A stretch of DNA of 64,000 bases from Macrostomum lignano (taxonomy: Eukaryota): the NCBI GenBank assembly GCA_002269645.1, contig NIVC01001915.1, forward strand, positions 62,001-126,000, given 5' to 3'. The notes below the pieces were generated by a model. It did not search any database, was not told the origin of the DNA, and saw only the letters and a list, made by a program, of their open reading frames with translations. Numbering within the stretch: the stretch's first letter is position 1; each line of letters starts with the position of its first letter. The position numbers were made by a program, and so were the translations under genes. Below, piece by piece: positions 10,697-63,214 of this stretch.

Positions 10697-10897
10697 ATGT
10701 CGTCCATCGCCCAGCAGAAGAAGATTGTTGAGCAGCTGCGGGCCGAGGCCAGCATGGCCCGGAAGCCGGTGTCCGAGTGCGTCAAGGACATGATCCAGTT
10801 CATGGACAGCAACAAGGACAAGGACTGCCTGGTGTCCGGTTTCCAGTCCAAGAAGGACAATCCGTTCCAAGAGAAGGGCGGCTGCTCGGTGCTGTAG
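10697..10897 (+). CDS. GNG: Heterotrimeric G-protein gamma subunit
   Basis: 66 aa: IAQQKKIVEQLRAEASMARKPVSECVKDMIQF...DCLVSGF...DNPFQEKGG with C-terminal CAAX box CSVL. Probable 5'UTR intron 10305-10685 (AAG|GTGAGA ... ACAG); AATAAA at 11343-11348. Confidence 0.95.
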   Translation: MSSIAQQKKIVEQLRAEASMARKPVSECVKDMIQFMDSNKDKDCLVSGFQSKKDNPFQEKGGCSVL

Positions 10898-16150: not shown

Positions 16151-16902
16151 TGAAGGGAAATCTAAATGGGAACCTGAAGGAAGCCACAGACTCCTGAAGT
16201 ATCAGAAACAGGCAACTTCTCAGCAATTAAATCAGCTTCGAACAGAATAAAAATTCTCACCAAAGCAGAATGCAGAGCGAGTTCATTTTTACACCTGCAT
16301 GAATTCGAAGAAATCCCGAGAAATCAAAGTATTTTTAGAAACTGTGCTTTATCGCAGGGATAAATAGCGAAGGTTCGCTCTGAAGGATGGGGAATATTAT
16401 ATATGAAGCTGGGGATCTGCAAGTTGCCCACTGGTTGGCTGGGGCGCTCCAACCGAATTCCCTCCATTGAGAGTCCAATCAGCAACTGGAGGCTTTTTTG
16501 AGTTCGAAATAAAATATAAGCCGAATTGATTTGGGATATTGGGATAAAAATGGGAGGTAAAGTAAATTGGGATGTTGGAAAATGCCCACACGGTTGGGAC
16601 TTGTCGAGGGCCAGAAATCCCGCGGCTTCAGGCATGGGAAATCAGCGCTGCATTGTACTTGTCCCCCCAGCTGCCGCCGTGGGAATTCCGGCTGGAGAAG
16701 CTGCCTTCTTATCTTCCTCAAGCTCCTTTGAGGAGCTTGTCGTGCCTGAGCTGTCAGGGAGTACTGGATGGAGAGTCTGGATGGCCACGGAGCTCTGGCT
16801 GCGATAATTTCTCTAAATTCCCCATTTACACACAGAAGATGTACATTAAGATAGAAGATAGATATATTAGAAGACATAGATTAGATTAGATTAGAATGAA
16901 AT

Positions 16903-17630
<728 letters not shown>

Positions 17631-17982
17631 GCTTGCCAGTCCAGATGTTTAACCTGAGTAGTCCATGTCCCGGCCTTACCGTCTCGCCTTTAGCACTCCC
17701 GACTCTCTCAATAGAAACTCATTCTTGTAGATGAACGCTTGGCTTGTTTCTCAAGATTTTCACGGCGCGACTGGTGCAGAATCGGTCCGAAGGAAGGAAG
17801 GCACGCAACTTTTAGTGGCTTCTGCTCATGGACTGCTTTAAAAACTTTTCCTGTACTAGAAACCAAATATAGTTGGTAATAAAACGACACCCTTTGCCGG
17901 ATGATTCATGGCTCGTAGCTGCAACGAAATTCAGCCGGTAGCTGGGAGGTGAAGCCCTCCCAAATCGGCTGGAGAAGCATTC

Positions 17983-18275
17983 GGCGCCCCTTCACAGTGT
18001 CTTTGGCGCCCCTTCACAGTGTCTTTGGCGCCCCTTCACAGTGTCTTTGGCGCCCCTTAACAGTGTCTTTGGCGCCCCTTAACAGTGTCTTTGGCGCCCC
18101 TTAACAGTGTCTTTGGCGCCCCTTAACAGTGTCTTTGGCGCCCCTTAACAGTGTCTTTGGCGCCCCTTCACAGTGTCTTTGGCGCCCCTTCACAGTGTCT
18201 TTGGCGCCCCTTCACAGTGTCTTTGGCGCCCCTTCACAGTGTCTTTGGCGCCCCTTCACAGTGTCTTTGGCGCCA
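17983..18275. repeat. 22-bp minisatellite GGCGCCCCTTCACAGTGTCTTT
   Basis: About 13 copies. Confidence 0.97.
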
Positions 18276-19041
18276 ATTCACTAGTAGTGGGTAATTTTTT
18301 ATCTAAAAGAAACGCCACCCACTCATATGAGATGGCACCCAATAAAATGAAATGCCGCCCTCAAAGACCAAAAAAAAATTTTTGGGTTAATTGAAATAAA
18401 ACTATTCGAAGTTTTTCTGTGTGGCCTTTCCGCCAGTCCACTATAGATTTTCCAGAAGCCCATGGCTAAAGTCAAAGAAACGGTACTTGAGGTAATTTCA
18501 TAGGCTTCTTTCCCGGACCTCTCTTTCTCCTCTTACTCATTCTCTCCCGTGAAGAGATTCTCCAGTGCTCAAGCAGCTTCAACCTGCGATCTTCTCAAAT
18601 TCTGTTTCAAGCTCGAAAATTGGCAATGCGTTCAAATATCCCCCCCGAATTCGATTAATTTTAACCAATGTAATAAGAATTAGCGGTCTTCATACCACTA
18701 TTAGTGAGCCCTAATCCTCCAAATCCTTGTGTCTTAATTGATCAATAATTCTCTCTATCACTTATAGCGATTTACAAGAGTTTTATATAGTTACGCGCGG
18801 TCCAATGCTCGAACTCGCCATGACTTCCCAACCCCCCTCCAGAGGGTGGACCTGTGTCTGATTAATTCTCGACAACATATTCAAGTCAAATGCAGTCCAT
18901 ATAAAAGTTGGATGAATAATTTGTATCAAAAACTATATAGTATAGCCATCATCAACATCAGTCTATTTCTTTCCAATTCAATTTAGCTTAAGCAGTCCGG
19001 AAACTACTACAAGTACTATATTGGCAGAGTGCGAGCATTTT

Positions 19042-19596
19042 TTAGTATCGATGGGACCTCGGCCTGGTCGGGTATTTCTCTCCGTAGTAGCCGTAGCCGT
19101 AGCCATCGTTGCCATAGTAACCGTAGTAGCTATTGTCGTAATAATCGTTAGACTCGTCGCCATAGTAATCGTAGTCTTTATCGTAGCCGCGGTTGCGTCC
19201 TTTACTATAGCTAGGCAGCTGGTCATAATAGATATAACCCTTGCCACCGTAGCCATTCGCATTACTTGTACTATAGTAACCATGGCCGCTTCTACCACCG
19301 CTACTGTAGCCCTTGCCGTAGCTCGGCAATTGGTCATAATAAACGTAGCCGCCGTTATTGCCTTTGCCTCGTCCATAGAGACCGTTGCTGCCAAGGTTGC
19401 CGTACTTATAGCCGGATTGCACCACCTTGACTAGGCCGGTGGCCCCGGGGTGGAACAGGGAGGCCGTGGGCGAACGAACCGGTACGTACCGGATTTTGCT
19501 GCTGCTGCCCGAGCCAGCGTAGACTGTGGCCGCCGAGGCCAGCAATAATAACAGTACATCGAGTACTAGCTGGTGTCGTGCAAGGCTCGTCTTCAT
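19042..19596 (-). CDS. Secreted Tyr/Gly-rich protein (eggshell/adhesive-like orphan), 184 aa, single exon
   Basis: Signal-peptide-like N-terminus (MKTSLARHQLVLDVLLLLLASAATVYA); about 33 Tyr and 32 Gly by manual count, no Cys; internal duplicate GY(V/I)YYDQLPSY(G/S)KG. The DNA is not a tandem array, so the composition is unlikely to be a repeat artefact. Confidence 0.8.
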   Translation of the reverse strand: MKTSLARHQLVLDVLLLLLASAATVYAGSGSSSKIRYVPVRSPTASLFHPGATGLVKVVQSGYKYGNLGSNGLYGRGKGNNGGYVYYDQLPSYGKGYSSGGRSGHGYYSTSNANGYGGKGYIYYDQLPSYSKGRNRGYDKDYDYYGDESNDYYDNSYYGYYGNDGYGYGYYGEKYPTRPRSHRY

Positions 19597-20179
19597 AGCC
19601 AGCCACAAGAGTACAGTTGAGTTAATTAGACGGAGGCTTCTAATCTAGTTCTCTCTAGTTAGGCAAGTTAGACTGGCTGCCCTGCAAGCGCCGGGTGTTT
19701 TATGACTGCTTATCGATTTTATTAGTTCAGCTTTGGGGGTGGGGTGGGTCGGGCTGGGGGCAGGAGTAAAAGGGTGAACGGTTGGGGTGGGGGAGGGGTG
19801 CGACGTTCTGACCAATGAGGTTTCCTCTGGTCAGCTTATTACAACCAGCGCTGATTGGATGAAATCTTGCTGATATATTGGACATGTTAAGAAGAGTATA
19901 CTCGTACATGCATGTATGTACGAATACTGTAAGTCGAGTCGTAAAACTCCGGCCCGCGAAGCCTCTCTATAAGGGTCTCGGGTCCTTTGAAACTTCACAA
20001 TAGCAATCCGGCTGCTCAAGGTTTGTCTCTTCTCAGCTTTTTTGTCTCCTCTCCTCTCTTATCTCCTCCATTCTCTCTACTTTTCTCTCTCATCTGGCTC
20101 GCAGCCATGAGCTGGATTGTTACTAAGCAAAATTGCGTTAAGTTTATTCATTAGCCCAACTAGATATAATTGGAGTCAT

Positions 20180-20402
20180 CCAGTCAGTCATCCAGTCAGT
20201 CAGTCAGTCAGTCAGTCAGTCAGTCAGTCAGTCAGTCAGTCAGTCAGTCAGTCAGTCAGTCAGTCAGTCAGTCAGTCAGTCAGTCAGTCAGTCAGTCAGT
20301 CAGTCAGTCAGTCAGTCAGTCAGTCAGTCAGTCAGTCAGTCAGTCAGTCAGTCAGTCAGTCAGTCAGTCAGTCAGTCAGTCAGTCAGTCAGTCAGTCAGT
20401 CA
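20180..20402. repeat. (CAGT)n microsatellite
   Basis: About 53 pure tetramers. Confidence 0.99.
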
Positions 20403-21232
20403 AGAGATTTAAGAGCTAAAAAATGCGCCCATACTTTCAAGTTGAACATGCCCTGCTGCCGGCATTGGCACAGGTTTAAAAATGCAAGTGGCTGTATTTG
20501 CAGGTAATTGAAGAAATTCAAACAAAAGTAAAAAATACACAAAAAATTAAACAAGGGTAAACGTACCGGAAGAAAAAAATTATTGAAGAAAATTACCCTA
20601 TCATGCGCTACGGGCACTACTAAAAGTAATAACACTGCTAACCAAAGTTAACAGCAGACAACATGAAAACGGCGCAAGCTTCTACTCCAGCGTACTTCCA
20701 GAAAGTACAGTAAAGTACACGAATAGGGTACTAATGTATTGATATTATCTTATCAGTGGTAGGCTTGCTTGCTTAATTAATATTAAAAAATCAAACTTAA
20801 AATGCGCTCTTTCTCTCTCTTTTTCTCTCTCGCTTACCTTTAACCCCAGTTTTTAGTGCTCTTTCGTGATTTTGTTACTCCCCCTTTTGTATTTGACACC
20901 TTAGAAGGTACAACCGTTTATATATTGGTGGGCCAATGAAGCATCATTAAAACAAAAATGTGTAATGAATCAGACATCCATACGGTATTAAACAACAGAA
21001 AATACAGAATAACAAGAACAAGAAATACAGAAGCCATGCAGACACAGCAAAATTTGCTATTTTATTAGAGTTCATAGCATTATAGCAGCACAAAGGAGGG
21101 CCAATTACTTCATGGTTAGTAAAGTCCATTACACGTCCATAAAGTCTCATAAAGAATTTCCATTACACGACACGGCCAATCAGCGTCTAGGAGCGCTAGG
21201 AGCGCGGGAAAAAATCAGTCAAACAATGCAGC

Positions 21233-24200
21233 TCACTCCAGCAGAGTCGCAGCTCTATCGTCCAGCACCTCGGCGCGCCACCAGCCCTCCGGCTGACGCG
21301 GCGAAGTGAGCCGCAGTTGCAGGCCGCCGTCGTCCTCCTCGCCCAGGGCGATCAGCTTAGCGGCGCAGCCGTCAGCGAATCGGCGGCCAGCGGGCGGCCG
21401 CAGGCGACACTCGGCGGCCAGGGCTGGGACTCCGGCGGCCGAGACGGGCACTCGGCGAACCCGGAGCTCGTCGGCGGCTGAACCGAACGACTCGTTGCCG
21501 TAGTCGACAAAACGGACTCGCAGCCGGCCTGCGGCATCGGCCGGCTCAACAATGCGAGCTCGGTACCAGTCCTCCTCGTACAGGGCGATGCAGGGCGTCC
21601 CGACAGTGAGCTCAGCTGCCGACAGCGCCGGCTGGTCAGCTGCCCGTTCCTGCAGCAGTTCGTGCAGCTCCTCCAGCCGCGTTTGCTCATCCACCCGCTG
21701 GGCAAACAGCGCCAGCTCCTCCGGCCCAATGCGACAGGCGTGGCAAACCAGGCCAACGAACTGCGGCGGAAAATTCCCTGCCGGGATGGTCGACTGCTCC
21801 TCGCTCTGCTGCTGCGGGCGGTCTGGCTGATTCTGTTGCTGCTGCTGCGGGAGGTCTGGCTGATTCTGTTGCTGCTGCTGCGGGCGGTCTGGCTGATTCT
21901 GTTGCTGCTGCTGCGGGCGGTCTGGCTGATTCTGTTGTTGCTGCTGCGGGAGCGTCTGATTCTGGGGCTGAAACTGGAAAGCAGACTGCAGCGTCTGCGG
22001 ATTCTGCTGTTGCTGCTGCTGCTGCGGGAGCGTCTGATTCTGGGGCTGAAACTGGAAAGCAGACTGCAGCGTCTGCGGATTCTGCTGTTGCTGCTGCTGC
22101 TGCGGGAGCGTCTGATTCTGGGGCTGAAACTGGAAAGCAGACTGCAGCGTCTGCGGATTCTGCTGTTGCTGCTGCTGCGGGAGCGTCTGATTCTGGGGCT
22201 GAAACTGGAAAGCAGACTGCAGCGTCTGCGGATTCTGCTGTTGCTGCTGCTGCGGGAGCGTCTGATTCTGGGGCTGAAACTGGAAAGCAGACTGCAGCGT
22301 CTGCGGATTCTGCTGTTGCTGCTGCTGCTGCGGGAGCGTCTGATTCTGGGGCTGAAACTGGAAAGCAGACTGCAGCGTCTGCGGATTCTGCTGTTGCTGC
22401 TGCTGCGGGAGCGTCTGATTCTGGGGCTGAAACTGGAAAGCAGACTGTAGCGTCTGCGGATTCTGCTGTTGCTGTTGCTGCGCACTGCTCTCAGATGAGT
22501 TGCTCTGCCGCCTGCTAGATGGCGACTGCTGCTGCTGCTGGTCGCGCAGCTGACGCAGCCGGGTCAAGACGTCGCGCCCGTTGACCTCCAGCGCTACCTG
22601 GACGCCTGAGGCTCGCCAGCAGGTAAAAGTTACAATAGCCGGCCGGCCAATCAGCTTGCGCAGGCTGGCAATGACGCTGGGCCCGGCCAGCTCGCCTGGC
22701 TGCAGGTTGGCCAGCGAGCAGTGCAGGGCGCAGGGCGGCTGCTCGGCCAGACTGTCCGGCAGTGGCGCCAACAGGCTGCCTGGTAGACAGGCCAGTCTGC
22801 CAGTGTCTACCAGACGGACCAGGTAGTGTCCACCGGACTCGCCCTGGCTGAGTACCAGAGCCCGGCGCCAGCAGGCGTCCCGCTGATCCATGGCCAGACA
22901 GGCGGAGTCCCGAGGGAAATTGTCCTCAGCATTGTCGGCCTGATCTCCGCCGCCCCGGCCGGGCCTGGCCGGAGGCCGGTAGCGACTGAGGCGATCCGCG
23001 ATTCGCTTGGCAATGGCGGCGTCGCAGTCCATCAGGATGTGCAGCGAGGCGGCGTGGTCAGCGTGCAGCACGACGCAACTGTCGCGGCCTTTGACCGGCG
23101 TCCTTAGCAACGGATGAGGAAAATTAAAAATCTTTAAAACCCATCAGCTACTTTCACATTTCTTAGCATTCTTGTCAGCTACTTTCACATTTCTTAGCAT
23201 TCTTGACAGCTACTTTCACATTTCTTAGCATTCTTGTCAGCTACTTTCACATTTCTTAGCATTCTTGACAGCTACTTTCACATCTCTTAGCATTCTTGAC
23301 AGCTGCTTTCACATTTCTTAGCATTCTTGTCAGCTACTTTCACATTTCTTAGCATTCTTGTCAGCTACTTTCACATTTCTTAGCATTCTTGTCAGCTACT
23401 TTCACATTTCTTAGCATTCTTGTCAGCTACTTTCACATTTTTTAGCATTCTTGTCAGCTACTTTCACATTTTTTTAGCCAAGGACTACTCAAGTAGGATG
23501 GGAAACCTTGTTTCTTGGAAAATTTGAGGAGGCAGACCCAATATTCATCTTTTAATATGCTGTGCCAATAAGTAGCCCTATTGATATTCATAGAGCTTTT
23601 TGTTTAGAAAATTAGGGTTCTATATTTAATCATTCTACGCACAATTAGCTAACCAACCTGACAGGATAGGCCGCAGGCAGACCAACAGTCTCAGCTGTGG
23701 GCGAGTGCTTTTTACTATTCGAAGCCGGCTTCAGCGCGTGCAGCAGCTCGGGCAGCAGACTCAAATCGGGACTGAATGAGACCTCAACAGTGGAGCCTAG
23801 AGACACGGACACCACGGTCAGCCGGCCGCACTGCAACTGGCCGGTCGGAAAGTCGGCCTGTCCGAAGTTGGCTAGCCGAGCGGTGAGAGACCAGGCCGGG
23901 GTCGACGCGACAGTTCTCGGCGCAACAGTCAGCTCGGCCAGCTTGGCAACAACTTCAACTCCGTAGTCAACCAGCAGCAGTCGGCAGTGGGATTCTGGGC
24001 CGGCCCCGTCTGGCAGCTCCATCAGCAGGGTTGCCCGTCGAGCAGGAGCTGTCGGTGTCGCGGCCAGCATCACGGGGGTGCCAGCGGGCAGGGGCGGTGT
24101 GGCCGGGCTGACATCCTGGCCGGGCAGCTTGTCGGCCAGCCGGCGCAGATGCCGCCGGTCGTCTCGCAGTAAGAACCGGCCAGTGCCGGTGGCCGGGTCC

Positions 24201-27072
24201 AGCCAGCAGAGCAGGGCCGGCTGTGTCTGGCCGACCTTCAGGCGGCTGGCGGCTGCATAGGGCGGGATTCCCGGCTCTAGCGGGCGCAGGTCAGCCAGCC
24301 AGATCAGCCGGTGCGCATCGGCAAGGCTGAGCAGATTGACTGAGACAGCGGCACCAACTGTTGAAACCTCCTTGGCTGCGGCCGACACCGGCCGGCAGGC
24401 GATGCAGAAGGGATCGAGCTTGGCCAGCGGGTGGTCAAGCGGCAGCGGCTCAAGGCTGGGGACGGCGGCCAAATCAACAACAGTGCAGCCAAAGTCCACC
24501 AGGCGGAGCAGGCGGCGAGAGACAGCGGCCGCCGAGGCTTCGAAGCGGATCCGGACGGGGCCGCGCTGGGGCAGGCGGGCAACGAATAGCACCTGCCTGA
24601 CTGCGGCTGATGGCGGCGGCGGCGATGGCGGCGACATGAGCGGAGCGGAGCGCAGGAAGGCGTCCAAGTCGGCGGCCAGCTGGTCGAGCTTGCGTCGATC
24701 GGAGCGCTTCAGCAGGTGCACCAGCAGCTGGCCATCGTCGTCGGTCACGTGGCTAACATCGGCGGCGAACCAGGGATTGTCGCCATTGTCAGTGACAGCG
24801 GCAGCCGGTGAAGGCCGCTCTTCAGGTTGAACCCCGGACAGGCTGAGAAACCACGGATTGAGCTGCTCGCCCTGCTCCGAGCTCAGCTCAACGGGCACCG
24901 GAGTTTCAGCTGTCGCGGCCGGAAACTCCACCCACAGCTTCACATCATCCGCTTCCTCGTCTGCGCCGGATTCGAGTTCGAGCATTCTTTCGGCTAGGCT
25001 CGAACTCGCGACCTCCGGCCAGGAGTTGCCGAGGCCGGCCAGGCGGCAGTGGACGGCCTGAGGCGGCATCCGGTCAGCCAGTTCGTCCGGCAGCGGCGTC
25101 AAATCGGCGGCACTGAATTTGAGCTGTTCGCCAAAGTCCAGGGTTTCAACGCTGACCGAGCTGAGGTAATTATTCGGCGGCAGGACTCGAGCCCGGTACG
25201 CCAGGCCGGTGTCGGGTTGGAAGGCGCACACCAGCCTGCCCGGCTGCAGGACCGGCTGAATCTCCACGTTCTGTGCGCGGGGATCGAATACAATGGGATA
25301 TTATCCTATGAGATTCGCTGCTAATATTCGAGTTTTATCTCATGAGATTCGATGCTGATATTCGAGTTTTATCTCATGAGAATCGATACTGATATTCGAG
25401 TTTTATCTCATGAGATTCGATGCTGATATTCGAGTTTTATCTCATGAGAATCGATACTGATATTCGAGTCTTATCTCATGAGATTCACTGCTGATATTCG
25501 AGTTTTATCTCATGAGATTCGATGCTGATATTCGAGTTTTATCTCATGAGAATCGATACTGATATTCGAGTTTTATCTCATGAGAATCGATACTGATATT
25601 CGAGTCTTATCTCATGAGATTTGCTGCTGATATTCAAGTTTTATCTCATGAGATTCGATGCTGATATTCGAGTTTTATCTCATGAGAATCGATACTGATA
25701 TTCGAGTCTTATCTCATGAGATTCACTGCTGATATTCGAGTTTTATCTCATGATAATCGATGCTGATATTCGAGTTTTATCTCATGAGAATCGATACTGA
25801 TATTCGAGTCTTATCTCATGAGATTCGATGCTGATATTCGAGTTTTATCTCATGAGATTCGATGCTGATATTCGAGTTTTATCTCATGAGATTTGCTGCT
25901 GATATTCGAGCCTTATTTCATGAGAATCGATACTGATATTCGAGTTTTATCTCATGAGATTTGCTGCTGATATTCGAGTTTTATCTCATGAGATTCGATG
26001 CTGATATTCGAGTTTTATCTCATGAGATTCGATGCTGATATTCGAGTTTTATCTCATGAGAATCGATACTGATATTCGAGTCTTATCTCATGAGATTCAC
26101 TGCTGATATTCGAGTTTAATCTCATGAGATTTGCTGCTGATATTCGAGTCTTATCTCATGAGATTAGCTGCTGATATTCGAGTCTTATCTCATGAGATTC
26201 ACTGCTGATATTCGAGTTTTATCTCATGAGATTTGCTGCTGATATTCGAGTCTTATCTCATGAGATTCACTGCTGATATTAGAGTGTAATCTCATGAGAT
26301 TTGCTGCTGATATTCGAGTCTTATCTCATGAGATTCACTGCTGATATTAGAGTGTAATCTCATGAGATTTGCTGCTGATATTCGAGTCTTATCTCATGAG
26401 ATTAGCTGCTGATATTCGAGTCTTATCTCATGAGATTCACTGCTGATATTCGAGTTTTATCTCATGAGATTTGCTGCTGATATTCGAGTCTTATCTCATG
26501 AGATTCACTGCTGATATTAGAGTGTAATCTCATGAGATTTGCTGCTGATATTCGAGTCTTATCTCATGAGATTCACTGCTGATATTAGAGTGTAATCTCA
26601 TGAGATTTGCTGCTGATATTCGAGTCTTATCTCATGAGATTAGCTGCTGATATTCGAGTCTTATCTCATGAGATTAGCTGCTGATATTCGAGTCTTATCT
26701 CATGAGATTCACTGCTAATATTCGAGTTTTATCTCATGAGATTTGCTGCTGATATTCGAGTCTTATCTCATGAGATTCACTGCTGATATTCGAGTCTTAT
26801 CTCATGAGATTGGCTGCAAGGAACTGAGTAAAAGAATTATATTACCACAGAATCACTCCAACAGTTCCATACCTGCATTGATCGGTGGTGCTTAATAAGA
26901 TCTTTAGTGAGCATTCGTAAGCCACTGCCGCCATCATCACGCAGTTGAACATGGAAACTACGTGGACTCTTAAAATTTGTACAGGCACATAAGTGCCAGC
27001 CAGTTGGAATTGTATTCATATTTGAGCAGACATTGAGAGGCCAACTGAAATATGGATTGTTATAAACCATTT
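21233..27072 (-). CDS. Multi-Tudor-domain protein (TDRD/Tudor class, at least 5 extended Tudor domains); 5' end uncertain
   Basis: Exons 27072 or 27044-26873 (CACTNFKSPRSFHVQL), 25270-23658 (GRLVCAF...AYRARV...TLDFGE; RLVDFG; LLVDYG) and 23102-21233 (CWRRALV...RLVDTG; VGTPCIALYEEDWYRARIV...RFVDYGN). The junctions are phase 0 and phase 2 and are compatible. AATAAA at 21066-21061. Confidence 0.88.
23145..23478. repeat. 31-bp intronic minisatellite
   Basis: CAGCTACTTTCACATTTCTTAGCATTCTTGT, about 10.5 copies. Confidence 0.97.
25310..26812. repeat. 34-bp intronic minisatellite with ATCTCATGAGAT palindrome
   Basis: TGATATTCGAGTTTTATCTCATGAGATTCGATGC, about 44 copies; fills nearly the whole Tudor-gene intron. 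Confidence 0.97.
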
Positions 27073-44292: not shown

Positions 44293-47200
44293 TCATTGTT
44301 GAACCAGCCGGCTGCCAGAATGCTGCTGCCTCTCCAGCAGGTGCTCCAGGCCGCTGTCCATCAGACGGGCCACCAGACGGTCGATGAACTGAGTCAGGTC
44401 TCGGACTCGCTCCTGGCGGTCAGCGGACAGCGCGGAGGATTTCGCCTCGGCCTCGGTTACTCGAAGCTCGGCGGCGGTGGCAGCAGCTTCGGCCTGGCGC
44501 AGGCGGGCCAGCAGCTGGGCGGAGTCGCGCCTGACGGACTCGAGCTCTGAACGGAGGCCATCGATGCGCAGCTCCAGCAGCTGCCGGGCGGCTTCGGCGG
44601 CTTCTTGGATATGCCATCGGCCTCGGAGGAGGAGCTGCTGCTGCCTGCTGAGATGGCGGAGAGGATTGAGATTTGCGCAGCTATTGTTTTTGTCACTGTT
44701 AGAAGTCGCGGTCGGGATCGAGGTGCCAGATTCGGTGTCAGGAGTCTGATTTTAGTGTCAACAGAAGGGCCGATTTTAGTGTCGGCAGAGGGGCCGATTT
44801 TAGTGTCAGCAGAGGGGCCGATTTTAGTGTCAGCAGAGGGGCCGATTTTAGTTTCAGCAGAGGGGTGGATTTTAGTGTCAGCAGAGGGGCCGATTTTAGT
44901 GTCGGCAGAGGGGCCGATTTTAGTGTCAGCAGAGGGGCCGATTTTAGTGTCAGCAGAGGGGCCGATTTTAGTTTCAGCTGAGGGGTGGATTTTAGTGTCA
45001 GCAGAGGGGCCGATTTTAGTGTCGGCAGAGGGGCCGATTTTAGTGTCAGCAGAGGGGCCGATTTTAGTGTCAGCAGAAGGGCCGATTTTAGTGTCAGCAA
45101 AGGGGCCGATTTTAGTGTCAGCAGAGGGGCCGATTTTAGTGTCAGCAGAAGGGCCGATTTTAGTGTCAGCAGAGGGCCGATTTTAGTGTCAGCAGAGGGG
45201 CCGATTTTAGTGTCAGCAGAGGGGCCGATTTTAGTGTCAGCAGAGGGGCCGATTTTAGTGTCAGCAGAGGGGCCGATTTTAGTGTCAGCAGAGGGGCCGA
45301 TTTTAGTGTCAGCAGAGGGGCCGATTTTAGTGTCAGCAGAGGGGCCGATTTTAGTGTCAGCAGAGGGGCCGATTTTAGTGTCAGCAGAGGGGCCGATTTT
45401 AGTGTCAGCAGAGGGGCCGATTTTAGTGTCAGCAGAGGGGCCGATTTTAGTGTCAGCAGAGGGGCCGATTTTAGTGTCAGCAAAGGGGCCGATTTTAGTG
45501 TCAGCAGAGGGGCCGATTTTAGTGTCAGCAGAGGGGCCGATTTTAGTGTCAGCAGAGGGGCCGATTTTAGTTTCAGCAGAGGGGTGGATTTTAGTGTCAG
45601 CAGAGGGGCCGATTTTAGTTTCAGCTGAGGGGTGGATTTTAGTGTCAGCAGAGGGGCCGATTTTAGTGTCAGCAGAGGGGCCGATTTTAGTGTCAGCAGA
45701 GGGGCCGATTTTAGTTTCAGCAGAGGGGTGGATTTTAGTGTCAGCAGAGGGGCCGATTTTAGTTTCAGCTGAGGGGTGGATTTTAGTGTCAGCAGAGGGG
45801 CCGATTTTAGTGTCGGCAGAGGGGCCGATTTTAGTGTCAGCAGAGGGGCCGATTTTAGTGTCAGCAGAAGGGCCGATTTTAGTGTCAGCAGAGGGGCCGA
45901 TTTTAGTGTCGGCAGAGGGGCCGATTTTAGTGTCAGCAGAGGGGCCGATTTTAGTGTCAGCAGAGGGGCCGATTTTAGTGTCAGCAGAGGGGGCCAATTT
46001 TAGTGTCAGCAGAGGGGCCGATTTTAGTGTCAGCAGAGGGGCCGATTTTAGTGTCAGCAGAGGGGCCGATTTTAGTGTCAGCAGAGGGGCCGATTTTAGT
46101 GTCAGCAGAGGGGCCGATTTTAGTGTCAGCAGAGGGGCCGATTTTAGTTTCAGCAGAGGGGTGGATTTTAGTGTCAGCAGAGGGGCCGATTTTAGTGTCG
46201 GCAGAGGGGCCGATTTTAGTGTCAGCAGAGGGGCCGATTTTAGTGTCAGCAGAGGGGGCCGATTTTAGTGTCAGCAGAAGGGCCGATTTTAGTGTCAGCA
46301 GAGGGGGCCGATTTTAGTGTCAGCAGAGGGGGCCGATTTTAGTGTCAGCAGAGGGGCTGATTTTAGTGTCAGCACAAGGGCCGATTTTAGTGTCAGAAAA
46401 GTCACCGATTTTAGCATCATGGGTGTTCATTTTAGTATCAGTGACAGCGATTTTAGTATCAGGAACATCTGCTCCAGTGTCAGGGGTTGCACTCACTATT
46501 GTACAGGAGCACAAACTCCAGTGTCAGGGGTTGCACTCACTATTGTACAGGAGCACAAACTCCAGTGTCAGGGGTTGCACTCACTATTGTACAGGAGCAC
46601 AAACTCCAGTGTCAGGGGTTGCACTCACTATTGTACAGGAGCACAAACTCCAGTGTCAGGGGTTGCACTCACTATTGTACAGGAGCACAAACTCCAGTGT
46701 CAGGGGTTGCACTCACTATTGTACAGGAGCACAAACTCCAGTGTCAGGGGTTGCACTCACTATTGTACAGGAGCACAAACTCCAGTGTCAGGGGTTGCAC
46801 TCACTATTGCACAGGAGCACAAACTCCAGTGTCAGGGGTTGCACTCACTATTGCACAGGAGCACAAACTCCAGTGTCAGGGGTTGCACTCACTATTGTAC
46901 AGGAGCACAAACTCCAGTGTCAGGGGTTGCACTCACTATTGCACAGGAGCACAAACTCCAGTGTCAGACAGCGTCAAAAATAGCGCCACCTGTGGCTGCG
47001 TGCTGAGGAAAAACCGGCCCAGTCTCTCACCTTCATCGCCGCTGCTGACCACAGCGGCGAGTCGCCCGTTGACCTCGCCGACCCCGGCTACGCCGCCCTT
47101 CGACGGTAGCGGCGACAGCGCATCGTCAACTTCGTCTTCTTCAACGCCTTCATCAATATCTTTGTCATCGTCGGGTGTCTTCGTCGTGTCGTGTCGTCGG

Positions 47201-57758: not shown

Positions 57759-60700
57759 ACGGTTGCATCTCAAGGTTCTCCCGCCGGCTTCCGTCGGCGT
57801 GGACAATCGAGTTCAGGCCCGCCTGGCCCCGCGCAGGCCCTGGTCGCCGCCGCCACAGGCAAAGGAGGTCCCGCAGTCCTTGGCGAAACCGCTTGCCAAT
57901 GAGACAGTAGAGAACGAAGTTCAGGCAGGAGTTGATGAGGACCAGGAAGTTGGTGGCCGCAATCGCCAGCTGAGCTGCGTATCGCTCGCCCAAGGCGGAA
58001 TCACCCAGCACGTCCACGGTGGTCAGGATGACGTTGGGCAGCATGAACAGGTAAAAACTCAGCACTATCGCCATCGAAACGAAGGTTAATTGCACCTGTC
58101 AGTTGGGGAGTTGGTGCTTTTGACAGATTGACATACTTAGCCACCTCACTCCCCAACCACCTCACTCCCCAACCACCTCACTCCCCAACCACCTCACTCC
58201 CCAACCACCTCACTCCCCAACCACCTCACTCCCCAACCACCTCACTCCCCAACCACCTCACTCCCCAACCACCTCACTCCCCAACCACCTCACTCCCCAA
58301 CCACCTCACTCCCCAACCACCTCACTCCCCAACCACCTCACTCCCCAACCACCTCACTCCCCAACCACCTCACTCCCCAACCACCTCACTCCCCAACCAC
58401 CTCACTCCCCAACCACCTCACTCCCCAACCACCTCACTCCCCAACCACCTCACTCCCCAACCACCTCACTCCCCAACCACCTCACTCCCCAACCACCTCA
58501 CTCCCCAACCACCTCACTCCCCAACCACCTCACTCCCCAACCACCTCACTCTCCAACCAACTCACTCCCCAACCACCTCACTCCCCAGCCACCTCACTCC
58601 CCAACCACCTCACTCCCCAACCACCTCACTCCCCAACCACCTCACTCCCCAGCCACCTCACCACCTCACTCCCCAACCACCTCACTCCCCAGCCACCTCA
58701 CTCCCCAACCACCTCACTCCCCAGCCAGCAGTTCAGCATTCTCAGGAAGGAATTCAATCGAGCCAACTTGCTCAGCAGCATCACGGAACCGTTGCATGCG
58801 CCGACACATTAGCAAATAAACTTTCCTCGTCAAGTTTTGTTTAGCAAAAAAGCCACCCATGCAAAAGCTGAATGCAGATTACTTCCCCCATGCGCCGGCA
58901 TTCTATCAGGCAGTTTAGCTTCGCGCGCAAAGCACTCAGTAGAATCAAGCCCGCCCAGTTTCAAGTGGGTGGAGTTGGTAGAAAAGAATTAAAAAGTCCG
59001 GAGAAAGACTTGGGACCTTCCCCGTCTCTATCGCTCCTCAATCTCTCCCCCCTCACTCCCCCTCTCGAGTCTCTCAAGTCTGAAGGATTTGCGGCCCCCC
59101 TCGGCGTGCTTTTTGGTTCCTCCCGACTTATTCTGGATTAGGGCCGTGGGAACTGGGATTGGGAGTACTTAATCCACTAATCCAGGACTGTGAAGCCTTC
59201 ATTTTCAGTTGCTAAGCGCTAACAAGACAGAGCCGAGGTGACGTTCGCTGTCAGTTTCCGATCAGTTGAGAAAAAAAACATTTTAACTGAAATCGAGTTC
59301 TTACTGGAACCCGTCAGACAGGGGGGCTGTCTGACCCTTTCAAGTCAGGTTAACCTAGATTCCCGGAGATCGCCTCCGCTGATACGCCCGTAACTGATTT
59401 AAAAGGACAGCTTATCAAGCAGCGTAAGGCCTTCCATGCGAGCTAATGGGACAAGGACTTCAGAGAAAAACAAACTATTCTTCCTTAGGCGGATGAACAA
59501 CCTTCGGACCGATGGACGTCCAAACAAACAAACAAACACGTCTGACTCTCGCGCCGCTTCCTGCCTGGGGGGGGGGGTCTGTCGTGCGATTCTCATCCGC
59601 GAGGGCCAACCACCAAGGCACAGAGACTGTACATGCCTGATGATTAGAAAGCCGGGACCGCTGTGCACCCTGAGTGAGCGTGTGAACAAGTGCGTGCTAA
59701 TGGGATTTTAGCCTAGTGGTTAGAGCGTCGGACTCGCGACTTGAAGGTCGGGGGTTCGTTTCCCGATCCCACTCTCCATTGCTTGAGTTCACCCAGCTGT
59801 AAAATGGGTGCCAGCATTAGCTGGGGTAATTGAGGGTGTGTGGCGACCCCCCCAGTCTTTGGAATGAACAGCCGTACGCAGCCTCCAGATGCGCCGCGCA
59901 ATAGCTGCGGCTGAGCTGTCGGTTGCACATCTGGGTCAATTAGGGCAGGTGTAATCAACTATTATTATTATCATTATTATTACCGCTAGCTGTGGGACAT
60001 CTTAACAGACAGACAAGCCGACAGTAAACACGCGAAAAAACCCAAACGTTTCATAACAATAAACACTAAACAGTAAACAAAAAACAATCATGCAAACAGA
60101 TTCCGCCAGACCAACCTCTTTCTCCTGGTTTCTGCCGGCACTTCGCCACGCTTTGATGTTCCGCCTCAGGCAGACTGCGATTCTCACATTGGAGGCGGTG
60201 ATCGCGGCGACCGGGACAACGAAGTAGAAGATCGTGTACATCACGCCGGTGTACGCGATCTCGTACAGGCCGGTTGCCGTGTCGTTGCCATGCCGTAGCC
60301 AGTCCGCAGGTTTATAAGTGAATTTGTAGGGCCTGCAACTGGCCGGGCCGCCGGTCTCATTGACCGAGTGGTAGCAGCCGAACAGGCTCAGCGACCGCCG
60401 CATCAGCAGCTGCTTCTGCTTCTCGTCCGCCTGCAGCTCCTCGCCAACCTCGCAGGTGTCAACAACCAGCTCGAAGTACTTCGGCGCATTGTAGATGCCG
60501 CTGAACAGCAGCACCAGGCCGATGTTGCGCAGCACCGACCGACTGGACGGCGGCTCGGCGTTTGCGCCGCGGGCGACGGACAACGGACGGCAGACGGCGT
60601 TGTAGCGCTCGAACGACACCAGCAGCGTGATGTAGATGGAGGCCATCTGCATGGTGTAGCACACGGGCATGACGTACTTCACCGCGTAGCCGTGGGTCAG

Positions 60701-61081
60701 GTACAGGTCGTACAGCAGCCGGCTGCCCACCTGGTGGTACTCGTAGAAAACACCAAGCACGTTGATGAGGAAATTGCCCAGGATGAAGACGGCGTCCACG
60801 AGGCAAAGGGCGGAGAGGATGGTGAACAGCGGGCAGCGGCGCGGCCGGCTGGCTCGCTGGAGGACCACGAAGGACAGCGCGTTGCCGATGATGCCCAGGA
60901 TGGAGACGAAGCCAGTCAGGTAGAAGGCGAGCACCGTGGTGGCTAGCTGGAAGCCCAGGTGACCATCGGCTGGAAACACCGGGCTGACCGAGTCCTCCAG
61001 TTCGGCTTCCGCCGCAGGCGAGGACGCCATGTTGATGGCGAGCTCGTCAACGTTCGATGAGATGACAGTGACTGAAGACAT
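57748..61081 (-). CDS. Class A peptide GPCR, FMRFamide-receptor-like
   Basis: Exon 61081-60116 covers TM1-5 (GIIGNALSFVVL; LCLVD; ITLLVSFERYNAVCRPL; IYNAPKYFE; YFVVP). A phase-0 intron follows. Exon 58095-57748 covers TM6-7 (FMLPNVI; TNFLVLINSCLNFVLYCLIGKRFR). Confidence 0.92.
58140..58726. repeat. 16-bp intronic minisatellite ACCACCTCACTCCCCA
   Basis: About 36 copies. Confidence 0.98.
59702..59982 (+). mobile_element. tRNA-derived SINE, apparently full length, in the GPCR intron
   Basis: A box TAGCCTAGTGG (59709-59719) and B box GGTTCGTTTCC (59753-59763); foldable tRNA-like head; central TTCACCCAGCTGTAAAATGGGTGCC; (TTA)n tail. A second copy lies at 43936-44068. Confidence 0.88.
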
Positions 61082-61113
61082 GGCGTGGGCGCTGCGGGCG
61101 GGAGCCGTGAGGG

Positions 61114-62200
<1,087 letters not shown>

Positions 62201-63214
62201 CACCTGATTTCTGGCTACAGGAAGATGTCTCCAGTCCTCAGATGCAGTGAGTTTCCAGATGGGCTAGATTGCTAGTTAGTCAGGCTTGAGTCAAACCTCG
62301 CTCAAACGTGGCTCTTTCAGAGGGTTAACGAAGGGAAAAGCAGGCCAGTCATTGGCTGAGGCCCGCACAAATCCTCTCGGGTCTCGGAAGCTCCAATAGG
62401 GGAAATCGACGAGCGGCCATCGCAGGAGAAATGAAAATAGTTTTGTCAAAAAATAGAAAAAAACAATGCAAATATTTCTAAAAATGTGACTTTGTAGAAA
62501 AGATCTCAGCGAGCAAAAAGAGCTTCACAAGCCGGCTACAAGTTTGGTTCGCAGTGAAATATCAAAAATAGCTACGGAATTTTCCCACATGAAGACAAAA
62601 GCTTTGGTGGAAGGGCGAAGCGCCTTTATTATGTTATTCTATATATTTATTTATAGTCAGCGGGTTAGCAACAGTGATGCCGAGAACTTAATAAAGAGCA
62701 GGGAGCGGACGCTGCTGTCTTTTTGCCTGCACGCACGAAAACTCCGTTGGGAAGCAATCACACGGAAGAGAGCCGCCTTGAGCTGCTGACAGAATCTATC
62801 CTCACTCAAGCCAGACTCACACAGCCTTCTCTGCACTTCGACGGCATCAATCTATCAGCCCCATGATATATCCCCCATGCAATACCTTCTTTACTAAGTT
62901 GAGCTCAGCGATGCGTGGTATAGGCTGGCCGGGCCTGCTGCGTGGCAACAGAGAGTGCTGCTCATATGTATTTATACTGCTCAATTAAACTAATCCGCTT
63001 CTGTCGGAACTGATAAGAAACTGAGTTGAGAATATGACTGAGCGACAGGCGTGCTGTGATGTGGGACATCAGTAAACCAAAATATGCAACATTTTGAACC
63101 GAAATTAACTTAGAATTCTCAGATCAGTGGCCCTTCAATTTGCAATATCGAGTGTTACGCCATCAATCTCTAAGAACAGATTCAGTGCGCACAAATCAGT
63201 CATTAAAACAGATA

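What the first reader, a model, noticed from the sequence alone, without database searches (positions are those of the whole stretch)
19042..19596. Orphan secreted Tyr/Gly-rich protein: candidate DOPA-type eggshell or glue precursor
Seen: signal-like leader; about 18% Tyr and 17% Gly; no Cys; a duplicated GY(V/I)YYDQLPSY(G/S)KG motif; a basic Gly/Lys middle; and an Asp/Tyr-rich C-terminal half (DYDYYGDESNDYYDNSYYGYYG). Established: trematode eggshell precursors and mussel foot proteins are Gly/Tyr-rich and cross-linked after tyrosinase converts Tyr to DOPA. Inference: a previously undescribed sclerotised structural or adhesive protein, whose basic and acidic blocks could self-coacervate. It lacks G-K/R-K/R sites, so a neuropeptide precursor is unlikely.
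Basis: partly seen in the sequence, partly recalled or inferred. Interest (0 to 1): 0.72.

Follow-up and report, generated by a model that had tools for sequence, protein, structure and literature searches.

The report
Secreted tyrosine/glycine-rich orphan flatworm protein
This is a real, already annotated but uncharacterised gene of the flatworm Macrostomum lignano that encodes a small, secreted, disordered protein very rich in tyrosine and glycine; it looks like raw material for a hardened eggshell or a similar secretion, but nothing available here shows where it is made or what it does.

Summary
Window 19042-19596 (minus strand) is a 184-codon ORF with 17.9% Tyr, 17.4% Gly, no Cys, a signal-peptide-like leader, a duplicated GY(V/I)YYDQLPSY(G/S)KG motif and an Asp/Tyr cluster. 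The window is Macrostomum lignano contig NIVC01001915.1. The ORF is the annotated gene BOX15_Mlig020662g1 ("hypothetical protein"), whose model comes from a transcript-only annotation. A second identical copy lies on NIVC01001446.1.

No homologue, paralogue or Pfam domain was found in about 5.8 billion proteins, 1.84 billion representatives, PDB or JGI metagenomes. Orphan status is common in this species (35-45% of genes).

The two motif copies differ at 12 of 42 nucleotides, and 10 of those differences are synonymous (P about 4e-6). The frame is therefore translated and the motif is conserved.

AlphaFold gives a confident leader helix and disorder elsewhere. The mature protein is about 17.5 kDa with pI about 9.4.

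The DOPA/eggshell reading is plausible by composition only. The trematode eggshell (TES) domain is absent. The tail-glue reading is disfavoured. The expression site could not be found.

Verdict: a real gene and an ordinary member of the convergent class of Tyr/Gly-rich secreted material proteins, with function unproven.

The parts
19042..19596 (-). Single-exon CDS of 184 codons plus stop. It is the annotated gene BOX15_Mlig020662g1 (Macrostomum lignano, NIVC01001915.1:81042-81596).
   Evidence: An identical CDS lies on NIVC01001446.1 (L002).
19516..19596 (-). Signal-peptide-like leader, aa 1-27 (cleavage after A22 or A27).
   Evidence: Hydrophobic core and -3/-1 small residues. AlphaFold helix 3-26, pLDDT 79-92. 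Heuristic only; no SignalP run.
19411..19515 (-). Non-repetitive basic N-terminal segment of the mature protein, aa 28-62 (1 Tyr, K+R 4, no acidic residues).
   Evidence: Two low-confidence beta-strands in the model.
19183..19410 (-). Basic Gly/Tyr/Ser/Asn-rich region, aa 63-138, which contains both motif copies.
   Evidence: K+R 9, D+E 3, pI about 9.7 for aa 63-139.
19309..19350 (-). Motif copy 1, GYVYYDQLPSYGKG (aa 83-96).
19198..19239 (-). Motif copy 2, GYIYYDQLPSYSKG (aa 120-133). It differs from copy 1 at 12 of 42 nt: 10 synonymous and 2 conservative replacements (V/I, G/S).
   Evidence: binomial P = 3.6e-6 for 10 or more synonymous of 12.
19078..19182 (-). Acidic Asp/Tyr-rich block, aa 139-173 (DKDYDYYGDESNDYYDNSYYGYYGNDGYGYGYYGE). 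Several Tyr lie in a tyrosine-sulfation-like acidic context.
   Evidence: acidic clustering matched by 0.08% of shuffles. Sulfation is inference only.
19171..19182 (-). 12-nt in-frame segment (DKDY) present in both genome copies but missing from the annotated 180-aa product. It lies between TACGAT direct repeats.
19045..19077 (-). Basic C-terminal tail KYPTRPRSHRY (aa 174-184).
19671..19704 (-). Putative core promoter: TATA-like CATAAAAC (19704-19697) 28 nt upstream of an initiator-like CCAGTC (19676-19671), about 78 nt before the ATG. CCAAT at 19858-19854 and ATTGG at 19816-19812 lie further upstream.
   Evidence: Read. Short motifs, inference only, no TSS data.

Best explanation
What is shown: this is a real, transcribed, lineage-restricted single-exon gene of Macrostomum lignano. 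It encodes a small secreted protein of about 17.5 kDa when mature, with pI about 9.4. The protein is intrinsically disordered and free of Cys. About a quarter of the residues from aa 63 onward are tyrosine (31/122), set among Gly/Ser/Asn spacers. A conserved duplicated YYDQLPSY motif, a basic middle and an acidic Asp/Tyr block follow.

Proposed mechanism (inferred, not shown):
1. The leader takes the protein into the ER and secretory granules.
2. The dense Tyr 'stickers' pair with Arg/Lys, and the basic and acidic blocks attract each other. The protein can then be stored as a condensed, coacervate-like phase.
3. After exocytosis, the tyrosines are oxidised. This could be by tyrosinase to DOPA/quinone with Lys/His as nucleophiles, or by peroxidase to dityrosine. 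The material is thereby cross-linked.

Most likely site: the eggshell-forming granules that M. lignano oocytes make themselves. The female cement glands are second. The specific eggshell assignment is a guess at about 0.25. The broader claim 'secreted material-forming protein' is what the confidence value refers to.
For: Real gene:
- The GenBank model exists at exactly these coordinates, at two loci.
- That annotation was built only from RNA-seq and de novo transcripts plus TransDecoder, and version 1 kept only transcripts with RPKM >= 0.5.
- The 12-nt gap between the product and both genomic copies fits a model derived from an aligned transcript.

Translated and constrained:
- The two motif copies are 71% identical in DNA but 12/14 identical in protein. 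10 of the 12 differences are synonymous.

Secreted and disordered:
- The leader features, no other hydrophobic segment, and pLDDT < 50 for aa 29-184.

Composition like tanned materials:
- Trematode vitelline proteins are Cys-free with about 12-15% Tyr and are cross-linked through DOPA. Schistosome eggshells form from Tyr-rich precursors oxidised by tyrosinase, with Lys/His attack. Planarian capsules are quinone-tanned and need tyrosinase.

Site and storage:
- M. lignano oocytes deposit their own egg-shell granules.
- A disordered Gly-rich tick cement protein phase-separates by simple coacervation (abstract).
Against: - No expression site, peptide, DOPA or cross-link evidence could be obtained. 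Identifier or peptide look-ups in the supplements of eight papers found nothing.
- There is no TES domain and no homology to any eggshell, byssal or cement protein.
- Composition alone is a weak predictor, because Gly/Tyr-rich secreted proteins also include antimicrobial peptides and rapidly evolving reproductive proteins.
- Many M. lignano germline and reproductive genes are species-specific orphans.
- Whether M. lignano has a tyrosinase in the right cells was not checked.
- Overall charge segregation is not significant.
Confidence: 0.5

Rival explanations
1. It is a rapidly evolving secreted reproductive protein, for example a prostate-gland seminal-fluid protein or an antrum product. It would act as a signal or modulator in the partner rather than as a building material.
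For: It is small, has a signal peptide and is an orphan, which is the typical profile of M. lignano reproductive transcripts. 48-54% of germline-enriched genes are Macrostomum-specific. In situ screens found many prostate-limited secreted transcripts (abstracts).
Against: An extreme Tyr/Gly low-complexity composition with a conserved internal repeat is more typical of materials than of signalling proteins. The synonymous saturation between the motif copies indicates an old, constrained sequence rather than fast turnover within the protein. No direct data exist either way.
Confidence: 0.17
2. It is a Gly/Tyr-rich host-defence (antimicrobial) protein, analogous to the YGGYG-type NLP/CNC peptides of Caenorhabditis elegans. 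It would be secreted by epidermis or gut.
For: Signal peptide, cationic mature protein (pI 9.4, about +7 at pH 8), GY/YG-rich (11 GY, 10 YG), no Cys. The parallel to the nematode peptides rests on my own knowledge and was not tested.
Against: At about 157 residues, with an acidic Asp/Tyr block, it is larger and more complex than those peptides. There are no dibasic processing sites to release short peptides and no homology.
Confidence: 0.08
3. It is a component of the tail duo-gland adhesive system. It could be a minor glue protein, or the unknown releasing factor if its Asp/Tyr block is tyrosine-sulfated and therefore strongly anionic.
For: The releasing factor of M. lignano is unidentified, and the published experiments implicate charge in attachment and release. 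Four or five Tyr lie in acidic, sulfation-like contexts. A basic Tyr/Gly/Lys composition resembles DOPA glues.
Against: The glue is described as a sufficient two-component system of giant proteins, and L-DOPA has not been found in flatworm temporary adhesion. None of five predicted tryptic peptides, nor the gene identifier, occur in the held supplementary text of the footprint/tail MS study (the files may be incomplete). The unmodified protein is net basic.
Confidence: 0.05
4. It is a transcribed but functionless young ORF, or a lncRNA with a fortuitous ORF in compositionally biased DNA.
For: No homologue anywhere. Other frames of the same region are also open: ORFs of 137 and 138 aa overlap it. 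The two genomic copies are identical from 1.5 kb upstream to 0.2 kb downstream, so they say nothing about coding constraint.
Against: The synonymous-versus-replacement pattern between the motif copies (10 to 2, P about 4e-6) is hard to get without selection on this frame. There is a proper leader peptide. The ORF is longer than any in 300 shuffles. The 12-nt transcript/genome difference is in frame.
Confidence: 0.1
5. It is a prohormone or neuropeptide precursor. The C-terminus ...TRPRSHRY loosely recalls the RPRY/RPRF ends of NPY/NPF-family peptides.
For: Signal peptide; the repeated motif is followed by G-K in copy 1; the RPR-containing C-terminus ends in Tyr.
Against: There are no dibasic sites at all. 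There is no Gly amidation donor at the C-terminus, and copy 2 of the motif has S-K instead of G-K. No helical PP-fold-like segment is predicted. The composition is unlike known flatworm prohormones (my own knowledge).
Confidence: 0.03

Closest known systems
Trematode vitelline (eggshell precursor) proteins, e.g. Fasciola hepatica vitelline protein B (TES domain, IPR012615)
   Same: Secreted from granules, Cys-free, Tyr-rich (about 12-15% there, 18% here). They carry Lys/Asp/Gly around the tyrosines and are substrates for DOPA/quinone tanning.
   Different: No TES-domain match and no sequence similarity. About 17.5 kDa here against about 29 kDa. Those are made in vitelline cells, a cell type M. 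lignano lacks. DOPA is untested here.
Schistosome Tyr-rich eggshell precursors
   Same: Low-complexity Tyr-rich secreted precursors, polymerised after tyrosinase oxidation with Lys/His nucleophiles. This protein has 10 Lys and 4 His.
   Different: No homology. The expression site and the chemistry are unknown here.
DOPA adhesive/cement proteins of mussels (small foot proteins) and sandcastle worms
   Same: Small, basic, disordered, and rich in Gly/Tyr/Lys/Asn/Arg, with oppositely charged partners that favour coacervation. This comparison rests on my own knowledge; DOPA in these systems is noted.
   Different: Those are permanent glues. L-DOPA has not been detected in flatworm temporary adhesion, and the M. 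lignano glue consists of two giant proteins. No homology.
Disordered glycine-rich cement protein of ticks
   Same: A secreted, disordered, Gly-rich low-complexity protein that undergoes liquid-liquid phase separation by simple coacervation and then solidifies (abstract). This is the physical behaviour proposed here.
   Different: Unrelated in sequence and organism. Phase behaviour was not tested here.
Gly/Tyr-rich antimicrobial peptides of nematodes (NLP/CNC type)
   Same: Signal peptide, GY/YG-rich, cationic, Cys-free (my own knowledge).
   Different: This protein is much longer, has an acidic Asp/Tyr block and a unique YYDQLPSY motif, and shows no homology.

Membership tests
Trematode vitelline/eggshell precursor proteins (TES domain) | [quoted passage not shown] | tested here: not met
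   Pfam-A hmmscan at E <= 10 returned only a sub-threshold RAD51_interact hit (13 bits against a cut-off of 25). The TES domain is named as the family hallmark.
Trematode vitelline/eggshell precursor proteins (TES domain) | Detectable sequence homology to family members | tested here: not met
   Only the protein itself was found in 5.8 billion proteins at E <= 10 and in 1.84 billion representatives.
Trematode vitelline/eggshell precursor proteins (TES domain) | Cys-free, Tyr-rich (about 12-15%) secreted protein | tested here: met
   0 Cys, 17.9% Tyr, signal-like leader.
Trematode vitelline/eggshell precursor proteins (TES domain) | Made in shell-granule-producing cells and found in the eggshell; Tyr converted to DOPA | not testable with these tools
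   No expression or proteomic data were reachable.
DOPA-based marine adhesive proteins (mussel foot / sandcastle cement type) | Small, basic, Gly/Tyr/Lys-rich, disordered, secreted | tested here: met
   pI 9.4, 17.5 kDa, Y 20% and G 20% of the mature chain, pLDDT < 50.
DOPA-based marine adhesive proteins (mussel foot / sandcastle cement type) | Present in the secreted adhesive, with DOPA | tested here: inconclusive
   Five predicted tryptic peptides and the gene identifier are absent from the held supplementary text of the M. lignano footprint/tail MS study. Those files may be incomplete. DOPA is not testable here.
Macrostomum duo-gland adhesive proteins (Mlig-ap1/ap2) | Giant multi-domain or repeat proteins (5407 and 14794 aa) with KR-rich or glycosylated repeat regions | tested here: not met
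   184 aa, no Pfam domain. Family description.
Neuropeptide/prohormone precursors | Signal peptide plus peptides flanked by dibasic (or G-K/R-K/R) cleavage/amidation sites | tested here: not met
   No K/R-K/R pair anywhere and no C-terminal Gly.
Phase-separating aromatic-rich low-complexity proteins (stickers-and-spacers type) | Disordered chain with frequent Tyr and Arg/Lys among Gly/Ser/Asn spacers | tested here: met
   31 Tyr in aa 63-184, 20 K+R, and disorder predicted.
Phase-separating aromatic-rich low-complexity proteins (stickers-and-spacers type) | Demonstrated condensation in vitro or in granules | not testable with these tools
   Needs recombinant protein or imaging.

The most novel reading that the evidence does not exclude
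This gene could be the first molecularly identified eggshell-granule precursor of an archoophoran flatworm, an animal whose oocytes make their own shell material. It would be non-homologous to the TES-domain vitelline proteins of parasitic flatworms. Tyr-rich, tanned eggshell precursors would then have arisen more than once in Platyhelminthes, or diverged beyond recognition when shell production moved from oocyte to vitellocyte. In M. lignano, which is transgenic-capable and open to RNAi, the gene would give a handle on shell-granule biogenesis and on condensate-to-solid hardening.
Probability: 0.2. Interest if true: 0.6.

Novelty: new member of a known kind. Interest (0 to 1): 0.36.

Why it matters
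If the eggshell reading is right, the gene offers a tractable entry into how free-living flatworms build and harden eggshells. M. lignano has RNAi, transgenesis and transparent animals. It would also allow a comparison with the tanned eggshells of parasitic flukes, whose formation is a drug-target theme.

If the protein simply condenses and cross-links, it is a compact 157-residue natural sequence for studying tyrosine-driven coacervation and curing.

As it stands, it is one of thousands of species-specific M. lignano genes. It carries suggestive composition and no functional data.

Tried and rejected
1. Homology searches. I ran the word-indexed HMMER search of 5.8 billion proteins with the full protein and with the mature chain at E <= 10. 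I also ran exhaustive phmmer over 1.84 billion representatives, Pfam at E <= 10, PDB sequences at E <= 10 and JGI metagenome contigs. Only the protein itself was found.

2. Paralogues. tblastn without composition correction against the window and the second locus found none. No other non-microsatellite Tyr/Gly-rich ORF exists in the window.

3. Constraint from the two genomic copies. They are identical from about 1.5 kb upstream to 0.2 kb downstream of the CDS, apart from one 8-nt microsatellite indel. The comparison is therefore uninformative.

4. Expression and proteomic look-ups. I searched by gene identifier and by predicted tryptic peptides in the held supplements of:
   - Wudarski 2017
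   - the aneuploidy DEG paper
   - the ageing paper
   - Brand 2020
   - Chai 2024 single-cell multiome
   - Grudniewska 2018 (that table was cut when stored)
   - Wunderer 2019
   Full-text searches for the identifier and for the motif were also run. Nothing was found. Several of these studies use other transcript identifiers, so absence is not evidence of no expression.

5. Structure. Single-sequence AlphaFold gave only the leader helix. A fold search on such a model would be meaningless and was not run.

6. NPY/NPF-like C-terminus (TRPR...RY). Rejected: no amidation Gly, no cleavage sites, no helix.

7. Correction to my notebook.

Full report
**Identity of the sequence**

The ORF lies on the minus strand at 19042-19596. 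It has an ATG at 19596, a TAA stop at 19044-19042, and 184 codons. A search of about 5.8 billion proteins returned a single hit. [quoted passage not shown]

The contig look-up shows that the window is part of GenBank contig NIVC01001915.1, with the gene at record positions 81042-81596. A second locus on NIVC01001446.1 has the same neighbours: a 1211-aa Tudor-domain gene upstream on the same strand and a 66-aa G-protein gamma gene downstream. The two CDS copies are base-for-base identical. Duplicate loci are expected, because the Mlig_3_7 assembly of this hidden polyploid contains 180 Mb of duplicated blocks at 95% identity or more.

**Check of the observation**

Every stated feature is present.
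- Tyr is 17.9%, Gly 17.4% and Ser 11.4%.
- There is no Cys and no Trp.
- There are no dibasic sites at all.
- GYVYYDQLPSYGKG lies at aa 83-96 and GYIYYDQLPSYSKG at aa 120-133.

The leader MKTSLARHQLVLDVLLLLLASAATVYA has a basic n-region and a strongly hydrophobic core. It has two acceptable cleavage sites, after A22 or after A27. It is the only part AlphaFold models with confidence: helix 3-26, pLDDT 79-92.

Taking cleavage after A27, the mature chain has 157 residues, about 17.5 kDa, pI about 9.4, and 20% each of Tyr and Gly. Tyrosines are almost confined to aa 63-184 (31 of 122 residues).

The acidic cluster is real. Nine Asp/Glu fall in one 35-residue window, which 0.08% of shuffles reach. 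Global charge segregation is not significant.

No ATG-ORF this long appeared in 300 shuffles of the local 3 kb.

**Is it a real gene?**

Three lines of evidence say yes.

First, the GenBank annotation of this assembly was derived solely from transcript evidence: StringTie/TACO on RNA-seq, BLAT-mapped de novo transcripts, and TransDecoder. Version 1 retained only transcripts with RPKM >= 0.5. The model therefore implies a detectable transcript.

Second, the annotated product lacks four residues (DKDY, 12 nt, window 19171-19182) that both genomic copies contain. The segment lies between TACGAT direct repeats. I infer that the model follows an aligned transcript from an allele or copy with an in-frame slippage deletion.

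Third, and most directly, the two motif copies are only 71% identical at DNA level but 12/14 identical in protein. Of 12 nucleotide differences, 10 are synonymous. The two replacements are conservative (V/I, G/S). The chance of 10 or more synonymous out of 12 is about 4e-6. This means an old internal duplication whose peptide sequence has been maintained in this reading frame. The ORFs of 137 and 138 aa that overlap it, one on the opposite strand and one in another frame of the same strand, are by-products of the codon composition.

Comparison of the two loci adds nothing. They carry no substitutions from about 1.5 kb upstream to 0.2 kb downstream of the CDS.

Upstream, a TATA-like CATAAAAC (19704-19697) lies 28 nt before an initiator-like CCAGTC, about 78 nt from the ATG. 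This is compatible with an autonomous promoter, but it is only a motif reading.

**Relatives**

None were found.
- The exhaustive phmmer search over 1.84 billion representatives found only the protein itself.
- The mature chain gave the same result at E <= 10.
- Pfam at E <= 10 gave nothing meaningful, and in particular no trematode eggshell (TES) domain.
- PDB sequences and JGI metagenome contigs gave nothing.
- There is no paralogue in the window or in the sister locus.

This orphan status is not remarkable in itself. 35-45% of M. lignano genes, and about half of germline-enriched ones, have no homologue in human, planarian or schistosome.

**What it most likely is and how it would work**

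The shown facts are these: a signal-bearing, soluble, Cys-free, disordered chain, extremely rich in Tyr set among Gly/Ser/Asn, with 20 Lys/Arg, 4 His, a conserved duplicated motif and one acidic Asp/Tyr block.

By composition it belongs with secreted material-forming proteins. Trematode vitelline proteins are Cys-free, about 12-15% Tyr, released from granules and cross-linked through DOPA. Schistosome eggshells form from Tyr-rich precursors oxidised by tyrosinase, with Lys/His attack. Planarian capsules are quinone-tanned and need tyrosinase.

M. lignano has no vitellaria. Its oocytes deposit egg-shell granules themselves. An oocyte-made shell precursor is therefore the most natural home for such a protein. 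The cement glands of the female opening are second.

The inferred mechanism has three steps:
1. ER entry through the leader.
2. Condensed storage, driven by Tyr-Arg/Lys contacts and by attraction between the basic block (aa 63-139) and the acidic block (aa 140-172). A disordered Gly-rich tick cement protein behaves in this way.
3. Exocytosis, followed by oxidative tyrosine cross-linking.

It is also a good context for tyrosine O-sulfation: four or five Tyr have two or more acidic neighbours and no basic ones. Sulfation would sharpen the charge contrast. This is inference.

**Rivals**

- A non-structural reproductive secretion such as a seminal-fluid protein is the strongest rival. Small secreted orphans are typical of that class in this species.
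- A Gly/Tyr-rich antimicrobial protein is possible but fits the size and the acidic block poorly.
- A role in the tail adhesive organs is disfavoured. That glue is described as a sufficient two-protein system of giant proteins. L-DOPA has not been found in flatworm temporary adhesion. The predicted peptides are absent from the held footprint/tail MS supplement text (weak).
- A prohormone is unlikely, because there are no dibasic sites and no amidation donor.
- A functionless ORF is argued against by the synonymous pattern in the motif.

**What could not be done**

The decisive datum is where the gene is expressed. It could not be retrieved. Identifier and peptide searches in the supplements of the relevant M. 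lignano papers returned nothing. Some of those tables are truncated or use other identifiers. DOPA, cross-linking and phase behaviour need bench work.

**Verdict**

'Secreted Tyr/Gly-rich orphan, not a neuropeptide' is sound. 'DOPA-type eggshell or glue precursor' remains a compositional analogy, with the glue arm weakened and membership in the trematode eggshell family excluded.

The gene is a new, unrelated member of the convergent class of Tyr/Gly-rich secreted material proteins. It is already annotated as hypothetical. It is of moderate interest, mainly as a candidate handle on eggshell formation in an experimentally tractable flatworm.

Noticed in passing
window 19171-19182 (minus strand): The GenBank product of BOX15_Mlig020662g1 is 180 aa and lacks DKDY. 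Both genomic copies encode 184 aa. The 12 nt lie between TACGAT direct repeats. This suggests an in-frame indel polymorphism or a third expressed copy, or a transcript-alignment gap annotated as a tiny intron.
   Followed up: partly
window 21233-27025 (minus strand; exon ORFs 21233-23110 and 23645-25267): This is the upstream neighbour, a 1211-aa Tudor-domain gene (Pfam TUDOR, E 9e-24 and 1.5e-12). One exon carries a long Gln-rich tandem repeat (QQQQQNPQTLQSAFQFQPQNQTLP...) that is open in several frames. The repeat region aligns in many registers between the two genomic copies.
   Followed up: partly
window 44748-46414 and 46472-46967: A 24-nt minisatellite (69 copies, 94% matches) and a 44-nt repeat (11 copies). 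ORFs across them on both strands give Pfam hits to phage T4 gp5 C-terminal and DUF2345 beta-helix repeats (E 4e-12 and 5e-22). These hits are most likely artefacts of translating an octapeptide-period repeat, not genes.
   Followed up: partly
window 20181-20402; 16891-17625; 17949-18300; 61029-62207: Dense simple repeats flank the gene. They include (CAGT)55, long arrays that translate as SIYL repeats (also near 61 kb), and a roughly 22-nt repeat that gives overlapping ORFs in three frames. Mechanical ORF lists in this window are dominated by such repeats.
   Followed up: no
window 10697-10897 (+) and 60002-61081 (-): A 66-aa G-protein gamma subunit gene (GGL domain, E 4e-16), and an ORF with a sub-threshold rhodopsin-family 7TM match (E 6e-7, 29.6 bits against a cut-off of 30.5) that is probably one exon of a GPCR gene.
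   Followed up: no
L001 versus L002 (window about 18000-21100 against NIVC01001446.1): The two homologous loci have no substitutions for about 2.2 kb around the gene. They are 96-97% identical further out. Divergence between the duplicated blocks is very uneven, which may reflect gene conversion or a mix of allelic and homeologous segments.
   Followed up: no
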